From the IMG/VR virus record IMGVR_UViG_3300034117_001582, positions 227,868 through 291,867 of that record: a DNA stretch of 64,000 bases, one strand, 5' to 3'. Positions 24,028 to 29,985 of the stretch are shown piece by piece. The notes under the pieces are model-generated. The model saw only the letters and a list, made by a program, of their open reading frames with translations, did not search any database and had not been told where the DNA came from. Made by a program: the position numbers and the translations under genes. Each line of letters opens with the position of its first letter. The stretch's first letter is position 1.

Positions 24028-24780
24028 TTATAACATTTCCTCAGCCAATGTCCAAAGTTTTGTATTCACTTGGTTCACAGCCATAATGTTTTCAAGACCT
24101 CGTAGTTTAGTTCTACGTCCACGTTGTGATGTTGTTTCAATACCACCTCTAATGTATTTCTCTTGTACCACATTGAAGGTTGTCCACAAGTCGTCACCTT
24201 GATCCTCATCTCTGTTTGGTGTTAATAACCCAACAATCTGTAACTCATTTAACACTTTGTCTTGTCCGAATCGGATTCCAACTGACTTACGAACAAATTC
24301 AATCTTCTCGTCAATTGTCATCTCACGTTCCATCATTCTTTTAACCGAACCCTCAATTTTAGGTAGTTTTCCAGCAAATGACTCTGTAAGTCGTTTTACC
24401 TCATCTAAATCAAAACGTGAGTGTCGTATATTGAATGATTCTGCAAGTGCTGTTGGTACTGTTAGTCCGTTTGAGCAGACCAATCTGTGTAATCCTGCAC
24501 TTACTCGGAAGGACGCCATTCCGTTATGTGAATTACGTATGATAGCTTCAACCAATGTGTCTCCAACTTTTGGTAGTTCGCCATTACGTAATCGTAGTTC
24601 GTGTACTGAGTGAATACCTTTACCCACTTGTTTTGCTGATGCTAATTCCCATCCTTCACGTTCGAAGTTTTCAAGGATATCCATAGTTGGGACAAATACG
24701 TATTTGTCTGACATCTTTGTAGATGGTGACGTTGCAAATACAGAAGGTGTTTGTGATTTTAATTGGTCAAGTGTTATCAT
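24028..24780 (-). CDS. DUF932-family phage/plasmid protein
   Basis: PSVFA....MSDKYVFVPT, RNSHNG.ASFRVSAGLHRLVCSNGL, DLWTTFNVVQE. Confidence 0.85.
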   Translation of the reverse strand: MITLDQLKSQTPSVFATSPSTKMSDKYVFVPTMDILENFEREGWELASAKQVGKGIHSVHELRLRNGELPKVGDTLVEAIIRNSHNGMASFRVSAGLHRLVCSNGLTVPTALAESFNIRHSRFDLDEVKRLTESFAGKLPKIEGSVKRMMEREMTIDEKIEFVRKSVGIRFGQDKVLNELQIVGLLTPNRDEDQGDDLWTTFNVVQEKYIRGGIETTSQRGRRTKLRGLENIMAVNQVNTKLWTLAEEML

Positions 24781-24854: not shown

Positions 24855-26213
24855 TTAACCATAAAAGTAAGTTTTTAACGTCTTTCTAACGTTTTCGTTA
24901 ACTTTTATTATTAATTCTTGATTTTTACTTTTTTTAAACTTTAAATCATTACCATCCCATATTGTATTTACCATTTTACCATTTACCAACGCATTTACCT
25001 TATCAAACTTATCTAACGTTAAACGAACGCTTGTTATTTTTTTATTAAATTTTGATTTTAAATATAAAATAAAGACATTAACGGTTCCTGTTTTAACGTC
25101 ATATTTAATCTTATGTTCTTTTTCTTTATCAATTTCAAAACTAGGCACGGTACCATCTAAAAGTGATTGGAAAATGTCATCCTCATTTGATAATAAGTCA
25201 TTTGGGTTAGTCATCGAAACATTATTAATTTTACTAAATAAATTTCCCCATGTAGTTCCGTTTAATATGCCGTCCTTGATTGTTAATGCCTCACCACTAC
25301 CAATACTAACCTTATACCCATTAAGTGTTTTTTTAAGTGATAAATAATAACCTGACCCATCAGGTATTTTTTTTGTTTTGCCATCATTTTCTAATGGTTC
25401 TCCATAAAAAATATATTCACCATCACCTAAAACACCCAAAGAAACGTTTTCATCTAACACAAAATTACTATATGAATCAACAACCCCTGTTGGTGTTGTA
25501 TTATTATTATTTAGTGTTGGTTTTGGTATTACCTCATCATTTGGCGTATCACTTTGCCCAAACTTTAAATCTTTACCATCCCATATTACGGTAACATCTT
25601 CCTGATTTATGGTGGCAGTTATACCATCGGACGAATTTAATTCTAACCGAACATATGGTATTTTTTTATCACATTTTGATTTTAATATTAACGTAACAAT
25701 AATAACGGTTCCGGTTTTAGGGTCAAACACAATGTTATTTGACACATCTTCTTTATCAATTTCAAAACAAGAAACGGTATTATTTAAAAGTGATTGGATG
25801 ATGTTATTTGCATCCGATGATAAACCATTTGGAGTATTAAATGAAACTTTATTAAATTTATAAAATAAATCTTTCCATGTGTTATCAATTAATTTACCAT
25901 CTTCGATTGTTAAATATGCATTATGGTCAATATTAACGTTAACCCCATTAATTGTTTTTTCAAGGGTTAAATAATATTTTGACCCGTCAGGTATATTTTT
26001 AGTTGTGTTATAATCTTTAAAAACACTTTCGACATTAAAAAAGTCATAAACACCACCATCTAAAATACCCAAAGAACTATTTTTATCTAATGTTATATAC
26101 TTACCACTTGAATTAGCAACCCCCGTTGGTGTTGTAGGATCAACATCTTCATTCAATATTCGTCTAACAATTCTTTTTAAATCGGATTCAGTAAGTCTTA
26201 TTACTTTTTTCAT
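24855..26213 (-). CDS. Leader-A protein with tandem duplicated ~190-aa domain
   Basis: TTPTGV...IPDGS.YYL...SLL..TV..FEIDKE...KTGTV...IWDG.DLKF twice. Confidence 0.9.
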   Translation of the reverse strand: MKKVIRLTESDLKRIVRRILNEDVDPTTPTGVANSSGKYITLDKNSSLGILDGGVYDFFNVESVFKDYNTTKNIPDGSKYYLTLEKTINGVNVNIDHNAYLTIEDGKLIDNTWKDLFYKFNKVSFNTPNGLSSDANNIIQSLLNNTVSCFEIDKEDVSNNIVFDPKTGTVIIVTLILKSKCDKKIPYVRLELNSSDGITATINQEDVTVIWDGKDLKFGQSDTPNDEVIPKPTLNNNNTTPTGVVDSYSNFVLDENVSLGVLGDGEYIFYGEPLENDGKTKKIPDGSGYYLSLKKTLNGYKVSIGSGEALTIKDGILNGTTWGNLFSKINNVSMTNPNDLLSNEDDIFQSLLDGTVPSFEIDKEKEHKIKYDVKTGTVNVFILYLKSKFNKKITSVRLTLDKFDKVNALVNGKMVNTIWDGNDLKFKKSKNQELIIKVNENVRKTLKTYFYG

Positions 26214-26252
26214 ATTAAATAAATATGTCTTAAGACATAAAACAATACTTTA

Positions 26253-26579
26253 TTAAACTAATAACGTAACCATTTCTTTAATGCTTTGTTCTGAAACGAC
26301 ACCAACACTTGTATTCGTTACTTCAGACCCATTAAACGATTTGATTGCAGGAATACTTCTAATACCAATAGACGTTACGTAATCCTTATTTTTATCTATG
26401 TCCATAGTATACATTTGGATTTCAGTTTGATTGTTTTTGGCCACTTTTTCAAATATTGGCATCATCATCTTACAGGGTCCGCACCATAATCCATGAAATT
26501 CAACAATAATTTTTTCACCATTGTTTAATTTTTCTTTTAATTCTTTTGCGGTAATTTCTAAATTATTATGTCCTTCCAT
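26253..26579 (-). CDS. trxA: Thioredoxin
   Basis: WCGPC active site; IRSIP cis-Pro motif. Confidence 0.93.
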   Translation of the reverse strand: MEGHNNLEITAKELKEKLNNGEKIIVEFHGLWCGPCKMMMPIFEKVAKNNQTEIQMYTMDIDKNKDYVTSIGIRSIPAIKSFNGSEVTNTSVGVVSEQSIKEMVTLLV

Positions 26580-27268
26580 CTTCTATTATTTTTTATACTA
26601 TATAAATATTGTTTATTAAATTTTGGGTATTTTTTATTTACATCGCTAATAGATGCGCCTTCTTTAAATTCTTTTTTTATTTCCTTAATAATTTCAACAC
26701 CATATTTTGATTGTTTTCTAATATTTTGTGTTGTTTTATTTATTCTTTTTTCTTTTTCTTCTTCGGACATATTGTCCCAACCATTTTTAACTGATAGTTT
26801 TCGTCTTTCTTTTTCTTCATTAGCCTTATCCCCATATAAGTCCTCATACGTTTTACCTTTATGTGATCTACCATCTTTTAATTTTTTAGAAATCTTTTCT
26901 CTAATTTCTTTAGAGTGTCTATACCCTAAACATCCTTCACCTCCGTGTGTTGAGTTTAAACCTTCTTTATATGTGTCAAGGTCATTTATGTGGTGTTTTT
27001 CTCTTTCGTATATGTTTGATGCATTACACTCTTCTAATAACTCTATTTGAAAGTTTTCAACCCCATACTTTCTTATAGAATTACAAAATTTTGTATTTAT
27101 GTCTGTTTTTAAACATCTCCAAGCGTGTTCTTCAAATCTTTTTTTTAATGATGTTATTGTGCAACCAACATATTGTTTACCGTTAATAATGTTTTTAATT
27201 ATATATATGTAACCTTTTTCTAACATTATGGTGTTTATATATAAATATCACCATACAGCTCAAATTTC
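26553..27268 (-). mobile_element. Free-standing homing endonuclease insertion flanked by GAAATT direct repeats
   Basis: Left ATG GAAATT TGA (27271-27260); right TTA GAAATT ACC in trxA. Confidence 0.65.
26558..27226 (-). CDS. GIY-YIG homing endonuclease with NUMOD3-like motif
   Basis: GYIYIIKNIINGKQYVGCT..RF..H; GYRHSKEIREKISKKLK. Confidence 0.92.
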   Translation of the reverse strand: MLEKGYIYIIKNIINGKQYVGCTITSLKKRFEEHAWRCLKTDINTKFCNSIRKYGVENFQIELLEECNASNIYEREKHHINDLDTYKEGLNSTHGGEGCLGYRHSKEIREKISKKLKDGRSHKGKTYEDLYGDKANEEKERRKLSVKNGWDNMSEEEKEKRINKTTQNIRKQSKYGVEIIKEIKKEFKEGASISDVNKKYPKFNKQYLYSIKNNRRWKDIII

Positions 27269-27276
27269 CATAATTA

Positions 27277-27534
27277 TTATATTTTAACGACACGATTCCT
27301 AAAAAAACTATTAACTTTATGTTCTTCTCTATAATAGTTATTTTTTGGATTTTTCTTCTTTTCTGCATCCATATGACCATAATGATAAGCTCTATTTATA
27401 GCACTTTCTTCGTGGTTTTCTAATGAATTTGTTTTATCTATAATTTCTTCAATTAATGACAAAATGTCAGGGTTTGTTTCATTACCCTTTTTTTCTTTTA
27501 ACCAATTTCTTAATTCTTGTCGGAATGTTTTCAT
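27277..27534 (-). CDS. Hypothetical protein
   Basis: 85-aa ORF; TTGACA-N17-TATATT upstream (~27543-27571). Confidence 0.75.
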   Translation of the reverse strand: MKTFRQELRNWLKEKKGNETNPDILSLIEEIIDKTNSLENHEESAINRAYHYGHMDAEKKKNPKNNYYREEHKVNSFFRNRVVKI

Positions 27535-27600
27535 AGTGAATAAAATATAATTTACAAATTTATAAATGTCAAATAATTTACGACTTTTTGAACTTATCTT

Positions 27601-28176
27601 TTAAATATAATATTCAATTAATTCTTTTATTGGTTTGATTAATTGTTTAGGGTAATCGTTATTTAAAAAATCAATAAGTTCCTGTATTGAGTTAAAACTT
27701 GATGGAGTGTATTCTATTTTTTTATCTGAATTACTGTATTCATCAACATATTCATCTGTTTTTTTATCCTCAAAATAACTACCATCAACAGGAGTTTCAC
27801 AATCACCACCCCAATAAGGTGTTGCAAAACCTGTTAACTTATATTCTTTATCATTAAACTCAAAATCTATAGTCCCACTAAAACCACCCGAACTTAAATT
27901 TAGAAACATTTGACCATTGTTAAAATTATAATTTTTATTAATAAAATCAGTGTTAAACATAAGTTTTAGGACTAAGTCCTCAGCAAATTTACAATCTATG
28001 TTTATTTCTCTATTTTTAAGATAAGAAATAATTTGATGATTACTCATTCCCGTATAATCTTTAATGTCATCTATTGACATTCCCTCCATCCACATACTAT
28101 ATAAAAGGTCTGACTTCTTTTCTTCTTTGGATTCAAAAAGATTCTTATATTGAGATTCTGTTAATATTATTTTCAT
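27601..28176 (-). CDS. Leader-D protein (MKIILTESQYKNLFES)
   Basis: ORF track. Confidence 0.87.
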   Translation of the reverse strand: MKIILTESQYKNLFESKEEKKSDLLYSMWMEGMSIDDIKDYTGMSNHQIISYLKNREINIDCKFAEDLVLKLMFNTDFINKNYNFNNGQMFLNLSSGGFSGTIDFEFNDKEYKLTGFATPYWGGDCETPVDGSYFEDKKTDEYVDEYSNSDKKIEYTPSSFNSIQELIDFLNNDYPKQLIKPIKELIEYYI

Positions 28177-28472
28177 CTTTTCTTTTTAACTTTATTAAAA
28201 CCGTTTCTAATTTTATTGTTAAATTGTCCCGACATTAACATTAAAAAATCGTGTTTTGTAAATTTAATATCTGGATTATTATCTTCAAAACTCCATTCAG
28301 TTCTATTCGTTACCCACCCTTCGTAAACACCAAAATTATCAGGTTTATTACCTGGACCACTATTCATTATATCCTTATTTAATTCTTTAATAGAAGTATC
28401 AAGAATTTGTTCTAATTCACTTATCCTTCTTAATAATGCTATTTGAGATTCTGTTATTATTATTTTCATCAC
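28173..28472 (-). CDS. Leader-D protein (MKIIITESQIALL)
   Basis: ORF track; ATGA-type overlap. Confidence 0.85.
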   Translation of the reverse strand: MMKIIITESQIALLRRISELEQILDTSIKELNKDIMNSGPGNKPDNFGVYEGWVTNRTEWSFEDNNPDIKFTKHDFLMLMSGQFNNKIRNGFNKVKKKR

Positions 28473-28876
28473 CAGTTAAAGTCTTTTCTTTTATTGATTA
28501 CTTCTCCTATTGATATAGACGCAACACTTCCCCCTAATATGTCTCTTACTTCCCCCTGTAACTGATAAATAAAATTATCTAAATCGTAAAATAAATATAT
28601 AGATTCAAGATGAATATCAACGGTAATATGTATTTGAGATAATTCTTTTTTTTCAAGGTAACCCATAGAGGTTGTTTTTGATACATCTACCACCTTTATT
28701 TCTTCAATCATTTCTATTGGGTCACATATGTAATTGTGGTGTGACCTTATATAAGAACCTCCCTCACATTTTTCTTTTACCCCATCAAAAGCCATGTCAA
28801 TAAGATTTTGCATCGACTCATTTTTATTTGATTCAAATAACATTTTATATTGTCTCTCTGTAATTATTATTTTCAT
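28469..28876 (-). CDS. Leader-D protein (MKIIITERQYKMLFES)
   Basis: ORF track. Confidence 0.87.
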   Translation of the reverse strand: MKIIITERQYKMLFESNKNESMQNLIDMAFDGVKEKCEGGSYIRSHHNYICDPIEMIEEIKVVDVSKTTSMGYLEKKELSQIHITVDIHLESIYLFYDLDNFIYQLQGEVRDILGGSVASISIGEVINKRKDFNW

Positions 28877-29985
28877 ATCTCCACGTAATTTACGGTAACG
28901 TACATTGCAGTTCTTGGGTATGTTAAATCATTCATACAATCTTGAATTACCCCTTCAACTTCGTTTTGAATTTCCCACCCAACATTACTATCGGCAATAG
29001 CATCATCTAATCTTTCAGTTTTACCATTCATTAAAGAAACCATTCCACCTTCAGATACTTGGGCGGATAAATATATTTCAAAATCTCTTACGTATACATC
29101 AGATATTCTCCATTCAAAATCATAACCACCAACAGTTTTTTCAGGAAAATCTTTGGTGTGAAAAGTATTAATTGCTATGTGGTTTATGATTTCCCTTATT
29201 TTTTCCTCTCCTCCAATGTAGTCACTAAAAAATTCCTCGTACATTACGATATCTTTTCTATTATTATGGGTACTAATACCAAAATATTTTAATACGTCAG
29301 GATCAAATGTAGCATAACCTTTTTCCTCCTTTTCTTTATCCCACATCTGTATAAGAATGTCAGATTTTCTGGTAGGTTTTTGTGTGTTCTCATTTATACC
29401 ATAAGGTGCTCCATATATCTCTTGTAAGTCAATATCCACATCAATTGGGATTCCGTATTTTTCTAATAAACCATAAAAGAAATCATATACTGAACTTCTA
29501 ATCATTCCTTCAAAATCAGAACCTTCATAATTAAGTAACGCCTCATGGTAAGCAGCATCTATTGTGTCGTTCACCGTATATTCTTCATCCGTATCTTCAT
29601 TCCATCCTTGAAATCTCATAGTTCCACGAGGATCAACATCAACCATAATTTCAAGAATTGGTCTTTCAAAATCAAGATGAACAACTTTCATTGTTGTTTC
29701 CAAATCAAATTCACCCTCAACTAACTTATATTCCTTGGCATCAATTTCATCTTCAAGTTTTTTAAACAACACCTCAGAACCTCCATTGTATTCATACCAA
29801 ATTGGTCTAATGGTATCGTAATCTTCACGAGTTTCTTTATTAATATCCAAAACTCTAAATAACATATAATCCAAACTTGGTTCTTCCCCATGTTTTTTTT
29901 GATTATCCCAAAAACCATATAAAAACTCCCGAAGTTTTTTTTCAGTGAGGTTTTGATATTGTGATTCTGTTATTATTATTTTCAT
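28873..29985 (-). CDS. Leader-D protein with two distantly related modules
   Basis: NLTE|KKLREFLYGFWD and GINE|N..RKSDILIQMWD. Confidence 0.87.
   Translation of the reverse strand: MKIIITESQYQNLTEKKLREFLYGFWDNQKKHGEEPSLDYMLFRVLDINKETREDYDTIRPIWYEYNGGSEVLFKKLEDEIDAKEYKLVEGEFDLETTMKVVHLDFERPILEIMVDVDPRGTMRFQGWNEDTDEEYTVNDTIDAAYHEALLNYEGSDFEGMIRSSVYDFFYGLLEKYGIPIDVDIDLQEIYGAPYGINENTQKPTRKSDILIQMWDKEKEEKGYATFDPDVLKYFGISTHNNRKDIVMYEEFFSDYIGGEEKIREIINHIAINTFHTKDFPEKTVGGYDFEWRISDVYVRDFEIYLSAQVSEGGMVSLMNGKTERLDDAIADSNVGWEIQNEVEGVIQDCMNDLTYPRTAMYVTVNYVEI

What the first reader, a model, noticed from the sequence alone, without database searches (positions are those of the whole stretch)
26253..27271. 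Homing endonuclease inserted after codon 3 of thioredoxin and supplying it a new start
Seen: an orphan ATG GAA ATT TGA (M-E-I-stop) at 27271-27260 right after the upstream gene. The thioredoxin body continues TTA GAA ATT ACC GCA AAA (L-E-I-T-A-K). GAAATT is directly repeated at 27263-68 and 26553-58, 710 nt apart. Removing the insert gives ATG GAA ATT ACC GCA..., a natural M-E-I-T-A-K-E start. The current trxA start (MEGHNNL) lies inside the endonuclease 3' end. Inference: intronless invasion that rescues the target gene through an overlapping start.
Basis: partly seen in the sequence, partly recalled or inferred. Interest (0 to 1): 0.6.

Follow-up and report, generated by a model that had tools for sequence, protein, structure and literature searches.

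The report
Homing endonuclease captured thioredoxin's start codon

Summary
On the minus strand lie an 85-codon gene, an orphan ATGGAAATT+TGA, a 710-nt cassette (36-nt leader and a 222-codon I-TevI-type GIY-YIG endonuclease), and a thioredoxin (Trx) body that resumes at Leu-Glu-Ile. Its only usable ATG lies in the endonuclease's Arg-Trp codons, with a 22-nt overlap.

- Four endonuclease-free contigs share the window's exact left flank and start MEITNSE.
- A sister lineage without the endonuclease starts MEITAKE.
- MEGHNNL starts occur only behind this endonuclease.

No intron or intein is present.

New points:
- The arrangement is shared by a clade of lake phages. Trx dN/dS there is 0.05-0.20, so the gene is maintained.
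- About twenty related endonucleases all sit at the 5' end of trx, normally with an intact trx start after their stop. Some also keep the orphan. The overlap type is one nested clade, so it looks derived in two steps.
- The window's phage imported the cassette plus about 65 trx codons by recombination. The left breakpoint is inside ATGGAAAT.
- The orphan decays in sister lineages, which rules out splicing and makes loss of the endonuclease costly.

Use of the new ATG and cleavage activity are inferred, not shown.

The parts
27277..27534 (-). Upstream 85-codon gene of unknown function. It is the conserved left neighbour of trx in this phage group.
   Evidence: ORF. No Pfam or PHROG hit. It lies directly next to trx in the endonuclease-free relatives L016-L018, L020, L021, L003, L112-L115 and L121.
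27260..27271 (-). Orphan trx start: ATG GAA ATT (27271-27263), closed by TGA, which is the first cassette bases. It is a relic of the first three trx codons.
   Evidence: The spacer and first 8 nt are identical to the real trx start of L109, L110, L121 and L122. Sister overlap-type loci show it intact (L118), degenerate (L123, L125, L116) or partly deleted (L126).
26553..27262 (-). The 710-nt inserted cassette. Its register is ambiguous by up to 6 nt because GAAATT flanks both ends.
   Evidence: Window minus this stretch aligns colinearly with endonuclease-free relatives. A 151-nt contig of a lake run skips it.
27227..27262 (-). Cassette leader. It holds the conserved motif GTGATATTTATATATAAA (27251-27234) and a 7-bp stem (27255-27249 pairs with 27233-27227) that ends at the endonuclease ATG. 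It is a candidate promoter, operator or translational hairpin.
   Evidence: The motif is conserved in all 15 cassettes compared. Fold energy is -10.3 kcal/mol, z -1.7. Function is inferred by analogy with T4 endonuclease regulation (PMC2988022).
26558..27226 (-). Free-standing GIY-YIG homing endonuclease gene, 222 codons, I-TevI type.
   Evidence: PF01541. TIGR01453 matches over residues 4-219. PHROG homing endonuclease families match. The I-TevI catalytic domain 1LN0/1MK0 aligns over residues 4-92, with the motif residues aligned. dN/dS is 0.13-0.21 among clade members.
26558..26579 (-). 22-nt overlap of the two genes. The presumed new trx start ATG (26579-26577) is made from the endonuclease's Arg-Trp codons (AGA TGG). 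The endonuclease stop TAG (26560-26558) stands where the old trx ATG stood.
   Evidence: A stop lies two codons upstream of this ATG in the trx frame. No other ATG, GTG or TTG lies in frame before the CGPC site. The junction is the same in L116-L120 and L123-L126, apart from one base.
26253..26579 (-). Thioredoxin gene, 108 codons: six extra N-terminal residues (MEGHNN), Leu in place of the old Met, and WCGPC intact. It is the only Trx gene in the 292-kb genome.
   Evidence: PF00085 covers residues 8-104. TIGR01068 E 3e-25. Single copy in the genome. dN/dS is 0.05-0.20 among overlap-type genes.
26367..27262 (-). Imported tract: the cassette plus trx codons 7 to about 70. It resembles the overlap-type donor lineage, whereas both flanks resemble endonuclease-free siblings.
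   Evidence: Segment identities. Against L116/L118: leader 80-88%, endonuclease 87-89%, codons 7-70 85-90%, but codons 71-end 62-66% and flanks about 50%. Against L110/L121: flanks and codons 71-end 94-98%, codons 24-70 64%. Alignment.

Best explanation
A free-standing, I-TevI-type GIY-YIG homing endonuclease cassette lies inside the first three codons of the phage's only thioredoxin gene. There is no intron and no intein.

The first 8-9 nt of trx survive as a dead orphan just after the upstream gene. The Trx body follows the endonuclease without its own ATG. It is most likely translated from an ATG that the endonuclease's conserved Arg-Trp codons create 18 nt upstream, in the trx frame. That start adds six residues.

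Likely history (inferred):
1. Endonucleases of this family target the conserved 5' end of trx. They integrate there with a duplicated trx start, giving an orphan on the left and a working start on the right, as still seen in L137 and L032.
2. In one lineage the right-hand ATG and the old endonuclease stop were lost. The in-frame Arg-Trp ATG took over.
3. That cassette then spread. The window's phage acquired it together with about 65 trx codons by recombination. The exchange was homologous inside trx on the right, and within the 8-nt ATGGAAAT on the left.

Because the host gene's start now lies inside the endonuclease gene, and the orphan decays, loss of the endonuclease would cost the phage its thioredoxin.
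For: Anatomy.

Endonuclease-free alleles at the same locus:
- MEITNSE in L109, L110, L121 and L122, with a left flank identical to the window's.
- MEITAKE in L112-L115 / P0012.
- A lake-run contig that lacks the 710 nt.

The MEGHNNL start always lies behind the endonuclease: six complete loci, counting the window, and four partial contigs.

About 20 endonuclease relatives (54-77% identical) all abut the trx 5' end, with different upstream genes.

L137 has an intact orphan and an intact start, with the Arg-Trp ATG already open and in frame. L032 also carries an orphan.

The overlap type is one clade (100/100 support), grouped with the standard types L127, L139 and L137 and apart from the distant standard types.

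Mosaic identities support import of the cassette and part of trx.

The orphan decays in L116, L123, L125 and L126, while Trx stays under purifying selection (dN/dS 0.05-0.20). The endonuclease shows 0.13-0.21.

Trx is a single copy in the genome.

Genes in the window lack Shine-Dalgarno sequences. The new ATG has the usual A-rich upstream context with A at -3 and -2.

No RNA family was detected.
Against: - No direct evidence shows which start codon is used. G at position -1 is unusual for this genome (3% of genes).
- Endonuclease activity and its target are inferred only from family membership, linkage to trx and mosaic flanks.
- The rooting of the endonuclease tree rests on a midpoint root. 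Distant outgroups gave no resolution.
- The exact mutational path from the standard type to the overlap type cannot be reconstructed.
- A donor whose upstream gene resembled the window's cannot be excluded. The 8-nt left exchange is therefore the simplest reading, not a proven one.
- The RNA-library contigs may derive from carried-over DNA.
Confidence: 0.85

Rival explanations
1. One-step origin. A single illegitimate insertion at the GAAATT microhomology after codon 3 created the orphan, the start-less body and the overlapping start at once. The standard-type cassettes would then be separate or later events.
For: GAAATT flanks the insert exactly. Removing 710 nt restores a perfect MEITAKE frame. 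The root of the endonuclease tree is not firmly fixed.
Against: The nearest endonuclease relatives outside the overlap clade (L127, L139, L137) are all of the standard type, with the same 85-codon upstream gene and a leader of about the same length. L137 has both the orphan and an intact start. The right junction of the overlap type still resembles a spacer (AACAATT) followed by TAG where the others have AAATT + ATGG.
Confidence: 0.12
2. The insert is removed at the RNA or protein level (group I or II intron, or intein), so that Trx is made from the orphan ATG as MEITAKE.
For: Enzymes of TIGR01453 are often intron-encoded. Deleting the insert is in frame.
Against: No Rfam family is found at the gathering threshold or up to E 10. 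Only 36 non-coding nt lie on the left and none on the right. The endonuclease has its own start and stop, in another frame than trx, so it is not an intein. The orphan ATG is mutated or deleted in L116, L123, L125 and L126, yet Trx there is under purifying selection. The only contig that skips the insert carries 10 different letters, so it is another allele and not a splice product.
Confidence: 0.02
3. The ATG at 26579 is not used. Either Trx is initiated by re-initiation after the endonuclease stop at a non-AUG codon (for example ATT at 26555-26553), or the gene is silent in this phage.
For: The new ATG has an atypical G at -1. The endonuclease stop lies 19-21 nt downstream of it, inside the window in which ribosomes can re-initiate according to PMC2988022.
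Against: The ATG-to-Leu7 frame is open and MEGHNN is identical in all nine overlap-type proteins retrieved. The one DNA difference there (AAC/AAT) is silent in the trx frame but changes Thr to Ile in the endonuclease frame. Trx dN/dS of 0.05-0.20 argues against a silent gene. It is the only Trx gene in the genome.
Confidence: 0.08

Closest known systems
Aeromonas phage Aeh1 mobE inside nrdA ('genes in pieces'; Crona et al. 2011, PMC3045599)
   Same: A free-standing homing endonuclease that is normally intergenic has landed inside a coding sequence. The downstream gene piece overlaps the endonuclease's 3' end and carries an N-terminal tail that arose with the insertion. The host function is kept.
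   Different: mobE is an HNH enzyme and cuts NrdA in the middle into two polypeptides that need the new tails to assemble. Here a GIY-YIG enzyme cuts off only three codons. The upstream piece is a dead orphan, and the downstream piece is a complete Trx with six extra residues.
T4 seg/mob free-standing endonucleases and intronless homing (Edgell, Gibb & Belfort 2010, PMC2988022)
   Same: A GIY-YIG enzyme lies next to a conserved gene. It is present in some close relatives and absent in others. Flanking sequence is co-converted. Host expression signals lie inside the endonuclease gene, as with the gene 32 promoters inside segG, which favours retention. A hairpin or promoter lies at the endonuclease start.
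   Different: In T4 the embedded signals are promoters, and the reported overlaps are with upstream ORFs. Here the embedded signal is the start codon of the downstream host gene, and a relic of the old start remains.
I-TevI (PDB 1LN0/1MK0; NCBIfam TIGR01453)
   Same: Full-length match to the family model. The GIY/YIG, Arg, Glu and Asn motif residues align.
   Different: I-TevI is encoded inside a self-splicing group I intron. No intron is present here.
T4 mobA / gene 60 bypass cassette (bioRxiv 10.1101/2022.08.31.505936, listed; abstract only read)
   Same: An endonuclease-linked insertion in a coding region is made harmless by a translational fix.
   Different: That case uses ribosomal bypass of a 50-nt gap. 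This one simply substitutes the start codon.
Nuclease genes at boundaries of genetic exchange between phages (Barth, Dunham & Seed 2023, PMC10448857)
   Same: The endonuclease marks a sharp boundary between stretches of different ancestry. The endonuclease lies beside or within an important gene.
   Different: That work describes exchange tracts of more than 10 kb. Here the imported tract is about 0.9 kb and ends inside the target gene.

Membership tests
GIY-YIG homing endonuclease, I-TevI / Seg type | N-terminal GIY-YIG catalytic domain with conserved Tyr, Arg, Glu and Asn residues | tested here: met
   PF01541 E 2e-8. The alignment to I-TevI 1LN0 over residues 4-92 has YIY..YVG, Arg30, the ERE Glu and GLN Asn aligned.
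GIY-YIG homing endonuclease, I-TevI / Seg type | C-terminal DNA-binding region (NUMOD or helix-turn-helix modules) joined by a linker | tested here: inconclusive
   TIGR01453 matches full length (residues 4-219; 86.7 bits, above the cut-off), and PHROG 7168 covers residues 5-221. Scanned alone, the C-terminal half gives only a sub-threshold NUMOD3 hit (E 1.2).
GIY-YIG homing endonuclease, I-TevI / Seg type | Presence/absence polymorphism at one locus among close relatives, with mosaic (co-converted) flanks | tested here: met
   Endonuclease-free siblings L109, L110, L121, L122 and L112-L115. Segment identities. L006 against L005.
GIY-YIG homing endonuclease, I-TevI / Seg type | Site-specific cleavage of the endonuclease-free allele | not testable with these tools
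   This needs a cleavage assay. There is only indirect support: all ~20 relatives abut the trx 5' end.
Group I or II intron-encoded endonuclease | Ribozyme core around the ORF, with splice boundaries | tested here: not met
   No Rfam match at the gathering threshold or up to E 10. 36 nt of non-coding sequence lie on one side and 0 nt on the other. The orphan 'exon 1' is destroyed in sister loci.
Intein | In-frame fusion with the host protein, with no start or stop of its own | tested here: not met
   The endonuclease has its own ATG and TAG and is read in a different frame from trx.
Endonuclease-split 'genes in pieces' (Aeh1 nrdA type) | Both fragments encode polypeptides that reassemble into the enzyme | tested here: not met
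   The upstream fragment is three codons long and decays in relatives. The downstream fragment holds the whole Trx domain (Pfam match over residues 8-104).
Endonuclease-split 'genes in pieces' (Aeh1 nrdA type) | The downstream fragment overlaps the endonuclease's 3' end and gains an N-terminal tail from the insertion | tested here: met
   22-nt overlap and a six-residue MEGHNN tail.
Thioredoxin | Thioredoxin fold profile with the WCGPC active site | tested here: met
   PF00085 E 1e-21. TIGR01068 gives E 3e-25 but scores 88.4 bits, below its 96.8 equivalog cut-off. WCGPC is present.

The most novel reading that the evidence does not exclude
Start-codon capture may act as an 'addiction' device. 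By placing the host gene's only start codon inside its own 3' end, while the orphan start decays, the endonuclease makes its own deletion equivalent to loss of the phage's single thioredoxin. This would let it escape the usual cycle of invasion, decay and loss. The shared +8/+9 end of the orphans in two cassette subfamilies would mark the enzyme's cleavage site.
Probability: 0.35. Interest if true: 0.6.

Novelty: new variant of a known kind. Interest (0 to 1): 0.45.

Why it matters
Free-standing homing endonucleases are thought to survive by staying harmless, for example by sitting between genes or hiding in introns and inteins. Here metagenomes preserve a natural series of states at one locus:
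- the empty site;
- a cassette with a duplicated start;
- a cassette whose Arg-Trp ATG is already in frame with trx;
- loss of the host start, with take-over by the endonuclease-embedded ATG;
- decay of the orphan;
- transfer of the whole arrangement into a new phage background.

This shows stepwise how a selfish gene can become entangled with the expression of an important host gene. It also gives a concrete substrate set for testing target recognition by a new GIY-YIG lineage. For annotation, it warns that the true start of a gene next to an endonuclease may lie inside the endonuclease ORF.

Tried and rejected
- blastn of the 1.8-kb region against the GenBank phage collection gave no match.
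- Rfam found nothing relevant, over the whole window at the gathering threshold and over 26100-27600 at E up to 10. The only hits were a sub-threshold miRNA and a snoRNA.
- Searches with the single endonuclease protein returned only the window's own phage. An alignment query was needed.
- An exact search for the reconstructed window junction (21 nt) in viral contigs gave 0 hits. The MEITAKE alleles that exist differ at silent positions.
- The first endonuclease tree, with distant GIY-YIG outgroups, suffered long-branch problems and gave no root. It was replaced by a tree with close standard-type relatives.
- I first took the 9-nt extension of the flanking repeat (ATAATAATT) as proof of an 18-nt target duplication. 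I downgraded this after finding ATAACAATT in sister loci.
- Pfam on the endonuclease's C-terminal half gave only a sub-threshold NUMOD3 hit.
- Read laying used assembled contigs only, so it cannot show transcript ends, strand or rare spliced forms. A second 'joint' in run X18 (24-nt sides) was disregarded as unreliable.
- DNA of the P0125 contig, a second overlap variant, was not retrievable.
- Structure prediction, complex prediction and the large representative-protein search were not used, because the family scans had already settled the identities.

Full report
**1. What is in the sequence**

The window is the last 64 kb of a 291,867-bp virus record, judged 99% complete. It has 31% G+C, nearly all genes lie on the minus strand, and there are no Shine-Dalgarno sequences: 1 of 64 ORFs has one. 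Upstream regions are A-rich, with A at -3 and -2.

Read on the minus strand, the finding consists of these parts:
- An 85-codon ORF (27534-27277).
- The spacer TAATT, then ATG GAA ATT TGA (27271-27260).
- A 36-nt leader.
- A 222-codon ORF (27226-26558).
- A 108-codon ORF (26579-26253) that overlaps the previous one by 22 nt.

The 222-codon product is a GIY-YIG enzyme. Pfam PF01541 gives E 2e-8. NCBIfam TIGR01453 matches from residue 4 to 219 with 86.7 bits, above its cut-off of 56. PHROG homing endonuclease families match. The I-TevI catalytic domain aligns with the motif residues in place.

The 108-codon product is a thioredoxin with WCGPC. PF00085 gives E 1e-21 and matches from residue 8. 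It is the only Trx gene in the genome.

In the trx frame a stop lies two codons upstream of the ATG at 26579. No other ATG, GTG or TTG precedes the active site. That ATG is made from the endonuclease's Arg-Trp codons (AGA TGG). The endonuclease's stop TAG stands where relatives have the trx ATG.

**2.

Relatives were fetched in several ways:
- with the Trx protein and the 85-codon protein;
- with an endonuclease alignment;
- with DNA patterns;
- with protein word searches followed by context look-ups.

Every relative that has the 85-codon gene directly followed by trx starts Trx with ATGGA(A/G)AT = Met-Glu-Ile.

Four contigs share the window's exact left context, the last 40 nt of the 85-codon gene plus TAATT with one substitution (L109, L110, L121, L122). 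They continue ATGGAAATC ACA AAT AGT = MEITNSE. A 151-nt contig of a lake-water run shows the same empty allele.

A sister lineage has Trx proteins that begin MEITAKELQEK, the predicted sequence. These are P0012 (recorded on 58 contigs) and P0014. At the four loci examined, L112-L115, no endonuclease is present.

Trx proteins that begin MEGHNNLEITAKE exist in at least nine sequence clusters. Every context examined has the 222-codon endonuclease directly upstream, with the same 22-nt overlap and the same junction apart from one base. L116, L118, L123, L125 and L126 show the complete arrangement. L117, L119, L120 and L124 show the endonuclease 3' end. The refuting outcome, an endonuclease-free relative starting MEGHNN, was not seen.

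**3. Not an intron or intein, and not chance**

- Rfam finds nothing over the window, or at a permissive threshold over the region.
- There is no room for a ribozyme, and the endonuclease is read in a different frame with its own start and stop.
- In sister loci the orphan is mutated or partly deleted: ATGGTATTT in L123 and L125, ATAATATTT in L116, and five bases missing in L126. The Trx genes behind them are nevertheless under strong purifying selection (dN/dS 0.05-0.20 at dS up to 0.95). The orphan is therefore a relic and not an exon.
- The endonuclease itself shows dN/dS of 0.13-0.21.
- ATGGAAATT occurs once in the window, at the natural start position.

**4. The endonuclease family and the order of events**

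About twenty full-length relatives of the endonuclease (54-77% identical) all lie immediately 5' of a trx gene, behind at least three different upstream genes. The trx 5' end, conserved as ATGGAAAT in nearly all alleles, is therefore the likely homing target. This is an inference.

In all of these relatives the endonuclease stops 4-17 nt before an intact trx ATG ('standard type').

A close pair, L006 (occupied) and L005 (empty) with 96% identical flanks, shows a cassette flanked by an imperfect 17-nt duplication that ends at the ATG.

L032 and L137 carry an orphan ATGGAAAT(G/T) on the left as well as a working start on the right. In L137 the Arg-Trp ATG is already in frame with trx and open, so the gene caller extends Trx to MGKYLKIMEIT.

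In a tree of 23 endonucleases the overlap-type enzymes form one clade (100/100 support). This clade groups with the standard types L127, L139 and L137 (99/98) and lies apart from the distant standard types.

The simplest reading has two steps. First, integration with a duplicated start, which is harmless. Then, in one lineage, loss of the right-hand ATG and of the old stop, tolerated because an in-frame ATG inside the endonuclease could take over. The root is a midpoint root, and an earlier attempt with distant outgroups was unresolved. A one-step origin keeps about 12% of my belief.

**5. How the window's phage got it**

Segment-by-segment identities show a mosaic.

| Segment | vs empty-site siblings L110/L121 | vs overlap-type L116/L118 |
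|---|---|---|
| 3' end of the 85-codon gene | 98% | 48-60% |
| Leader | absent in these | 80-88% |
| Endonuclease | absent in these | 87-89% |
| trx codons 7-23 | 78-82% | 90% |
| trx codons 24-70 | 64%, with indels | 85-86% |
| trx codons 71-end | 94-96% | 62-66% |
| Downstream 120 nt | 98% | about 48% |

So the cassette and about 65 trx codons were imported into an L110-like genome. This is one-sided co-conversion, as expected for homing (PMC2988022; compare PMC10448857).

The left exchange lies within ATGGAAAT. Before it the window equals the empty-site siblings. After it the window follows the donors (T at 27263, then TGAGCTG against TGTGCAG). Unless an unsampled donor had a window-like upstream gene, the donor's orphan served as an 8-nt left homology arm.

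The Trx gene is a recombination hot spot in general: P0009, P0010 and P0048 are other mosaics.

**6. Expression (inferred)**

The leader holds a motif conserved in all 15 cassettes compared, GTGATATTTATA(A/T)(T/A)AAA. In most cassettes it also holds a GGTG/CACC stem that ends at the endonuclease ATG. This recalls the promoter-in-hairpin control of T4 endonucleases, but it is untested.

Trx can be translated either by independent initiation at the A-rich region before 26579, or by re-initiation linked to the endonuclease stop 19-21 nt downstream.

Contigs from three metatranscriptome libraries cover parts of the endonuclease and the left junction. This is weak evidence, because DNA carry-over is possible.

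**7. Comparison with known cases, and novelty**

The closest precedent is mobE inside nrdA of phage Aeh1. There the downstream piece overlaps the endonuclease and carries a tail born of the insertion (PMC3045599). T4 also has host promoters embedded in seg and mob genes, which favour their retention.

New here:
- the host gene's start codon is the captured element;
- the cut is so close to the N-terminus that no protein reassembly is needed;
- the intermediate states survive in nature.

I found no report of a thioredoxin-targeting free-standing endonuclease, but the literature library is incomplete.

I rate this a new variant of a known kind, with interest 0.45.

Noticed in passing
window 24855-26213, 27601-28176, 28173-28472, 28469-28876, 28873-29985 (all minus strand): At least four adjacent ORFs begin with nearly the same ~15 residues (MKIIITESQYKNLFE-like), and the 452-codon ORF begins with a looser version (MKKVIRLTESDLKR). 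The rest of each protein differs, and the two scanned had no significant Pfam or PHROG hit. The shared N-terminus also hits several places in relatives. It could be a common targeting or packaging signal, or a recombination module.
   Followed up: no
window 24855-26213 (minus strand): The 452-residue protein downstream of trx looks like an internal duplication: two halves with parallel motifs (…PTGV…LG(I/V)L…G…Y…F… and …SFEIDKE…). It has no family hit. Relatives have 439-473-residue versions.
   Followed up: no
window 27227-27255 (minus strand); L027, L029, L032, L034, L036, L116-L139 leaders: The motif GTGATATTTATA(A/T)(T/A)AAA is conserved 10-15 nt before every endonuclease ATG. The GGTG/CACC stem has one compensatory difference (A-T in the overlap type, T-A in the standard type). 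L006, L030 and L033 keep the motif but not the stem, so it may act at the DNA level as a promoter or operator.
   Followed up: partly
contig of P0125 (run ERR10034886; no DNA available): This is a second overlap variant inside the same endonuclease clade. The endonuclease has 220 aa and ends RRWKDL. The downstream gene is called from the Arg-Trp ATG with a 16-nt overlap.
   Followed up: partly
G000:C1:209272-209499 (outside the window): The genome holds a second GIY-YIG domain, inside a 431-codon open frame.
   Followed up: no
L006 4308-4595, L011, L029 3484-3771, L032 3491-3790: In the distant standard-type lineages trx is followed, with a short overlap, by a glutaredoxin/NrdH-like CxxC gene (MKSCGHC, MKGCPHC, MKGCPFC). 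That gene is not at this position in the window.
   Followed up: no
L005, L006, L010, L011, L013 Trx; L007-L009, L027/L028, L003 and L033 Trx: Several relatives have altered active-site motifs: WCRPC, WCQPC, WCLPC, WCSPC or FCGPC instead of WCGPC. WCRPC occurs with and without the endonuclease.
   Followed up: no
window 24028-24780 (minus strand): A 250-residue ORF corresponds to the DUF932 (PF06067) gene that is conserved two to three genes downstream of trx in all related contigs.
   Followed up: no
P0009, P0010, P0048 (Trx variants from metagenomes): These Trx alleles match the window's C-terminal ~37 residues exactly or nearly so, and in P0010 also its middle part. They have other N-terminal blocks, for example MQEISVSELKKK. 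This shows repeated recombination inside this 300-nt gene.
   Followed up: partly
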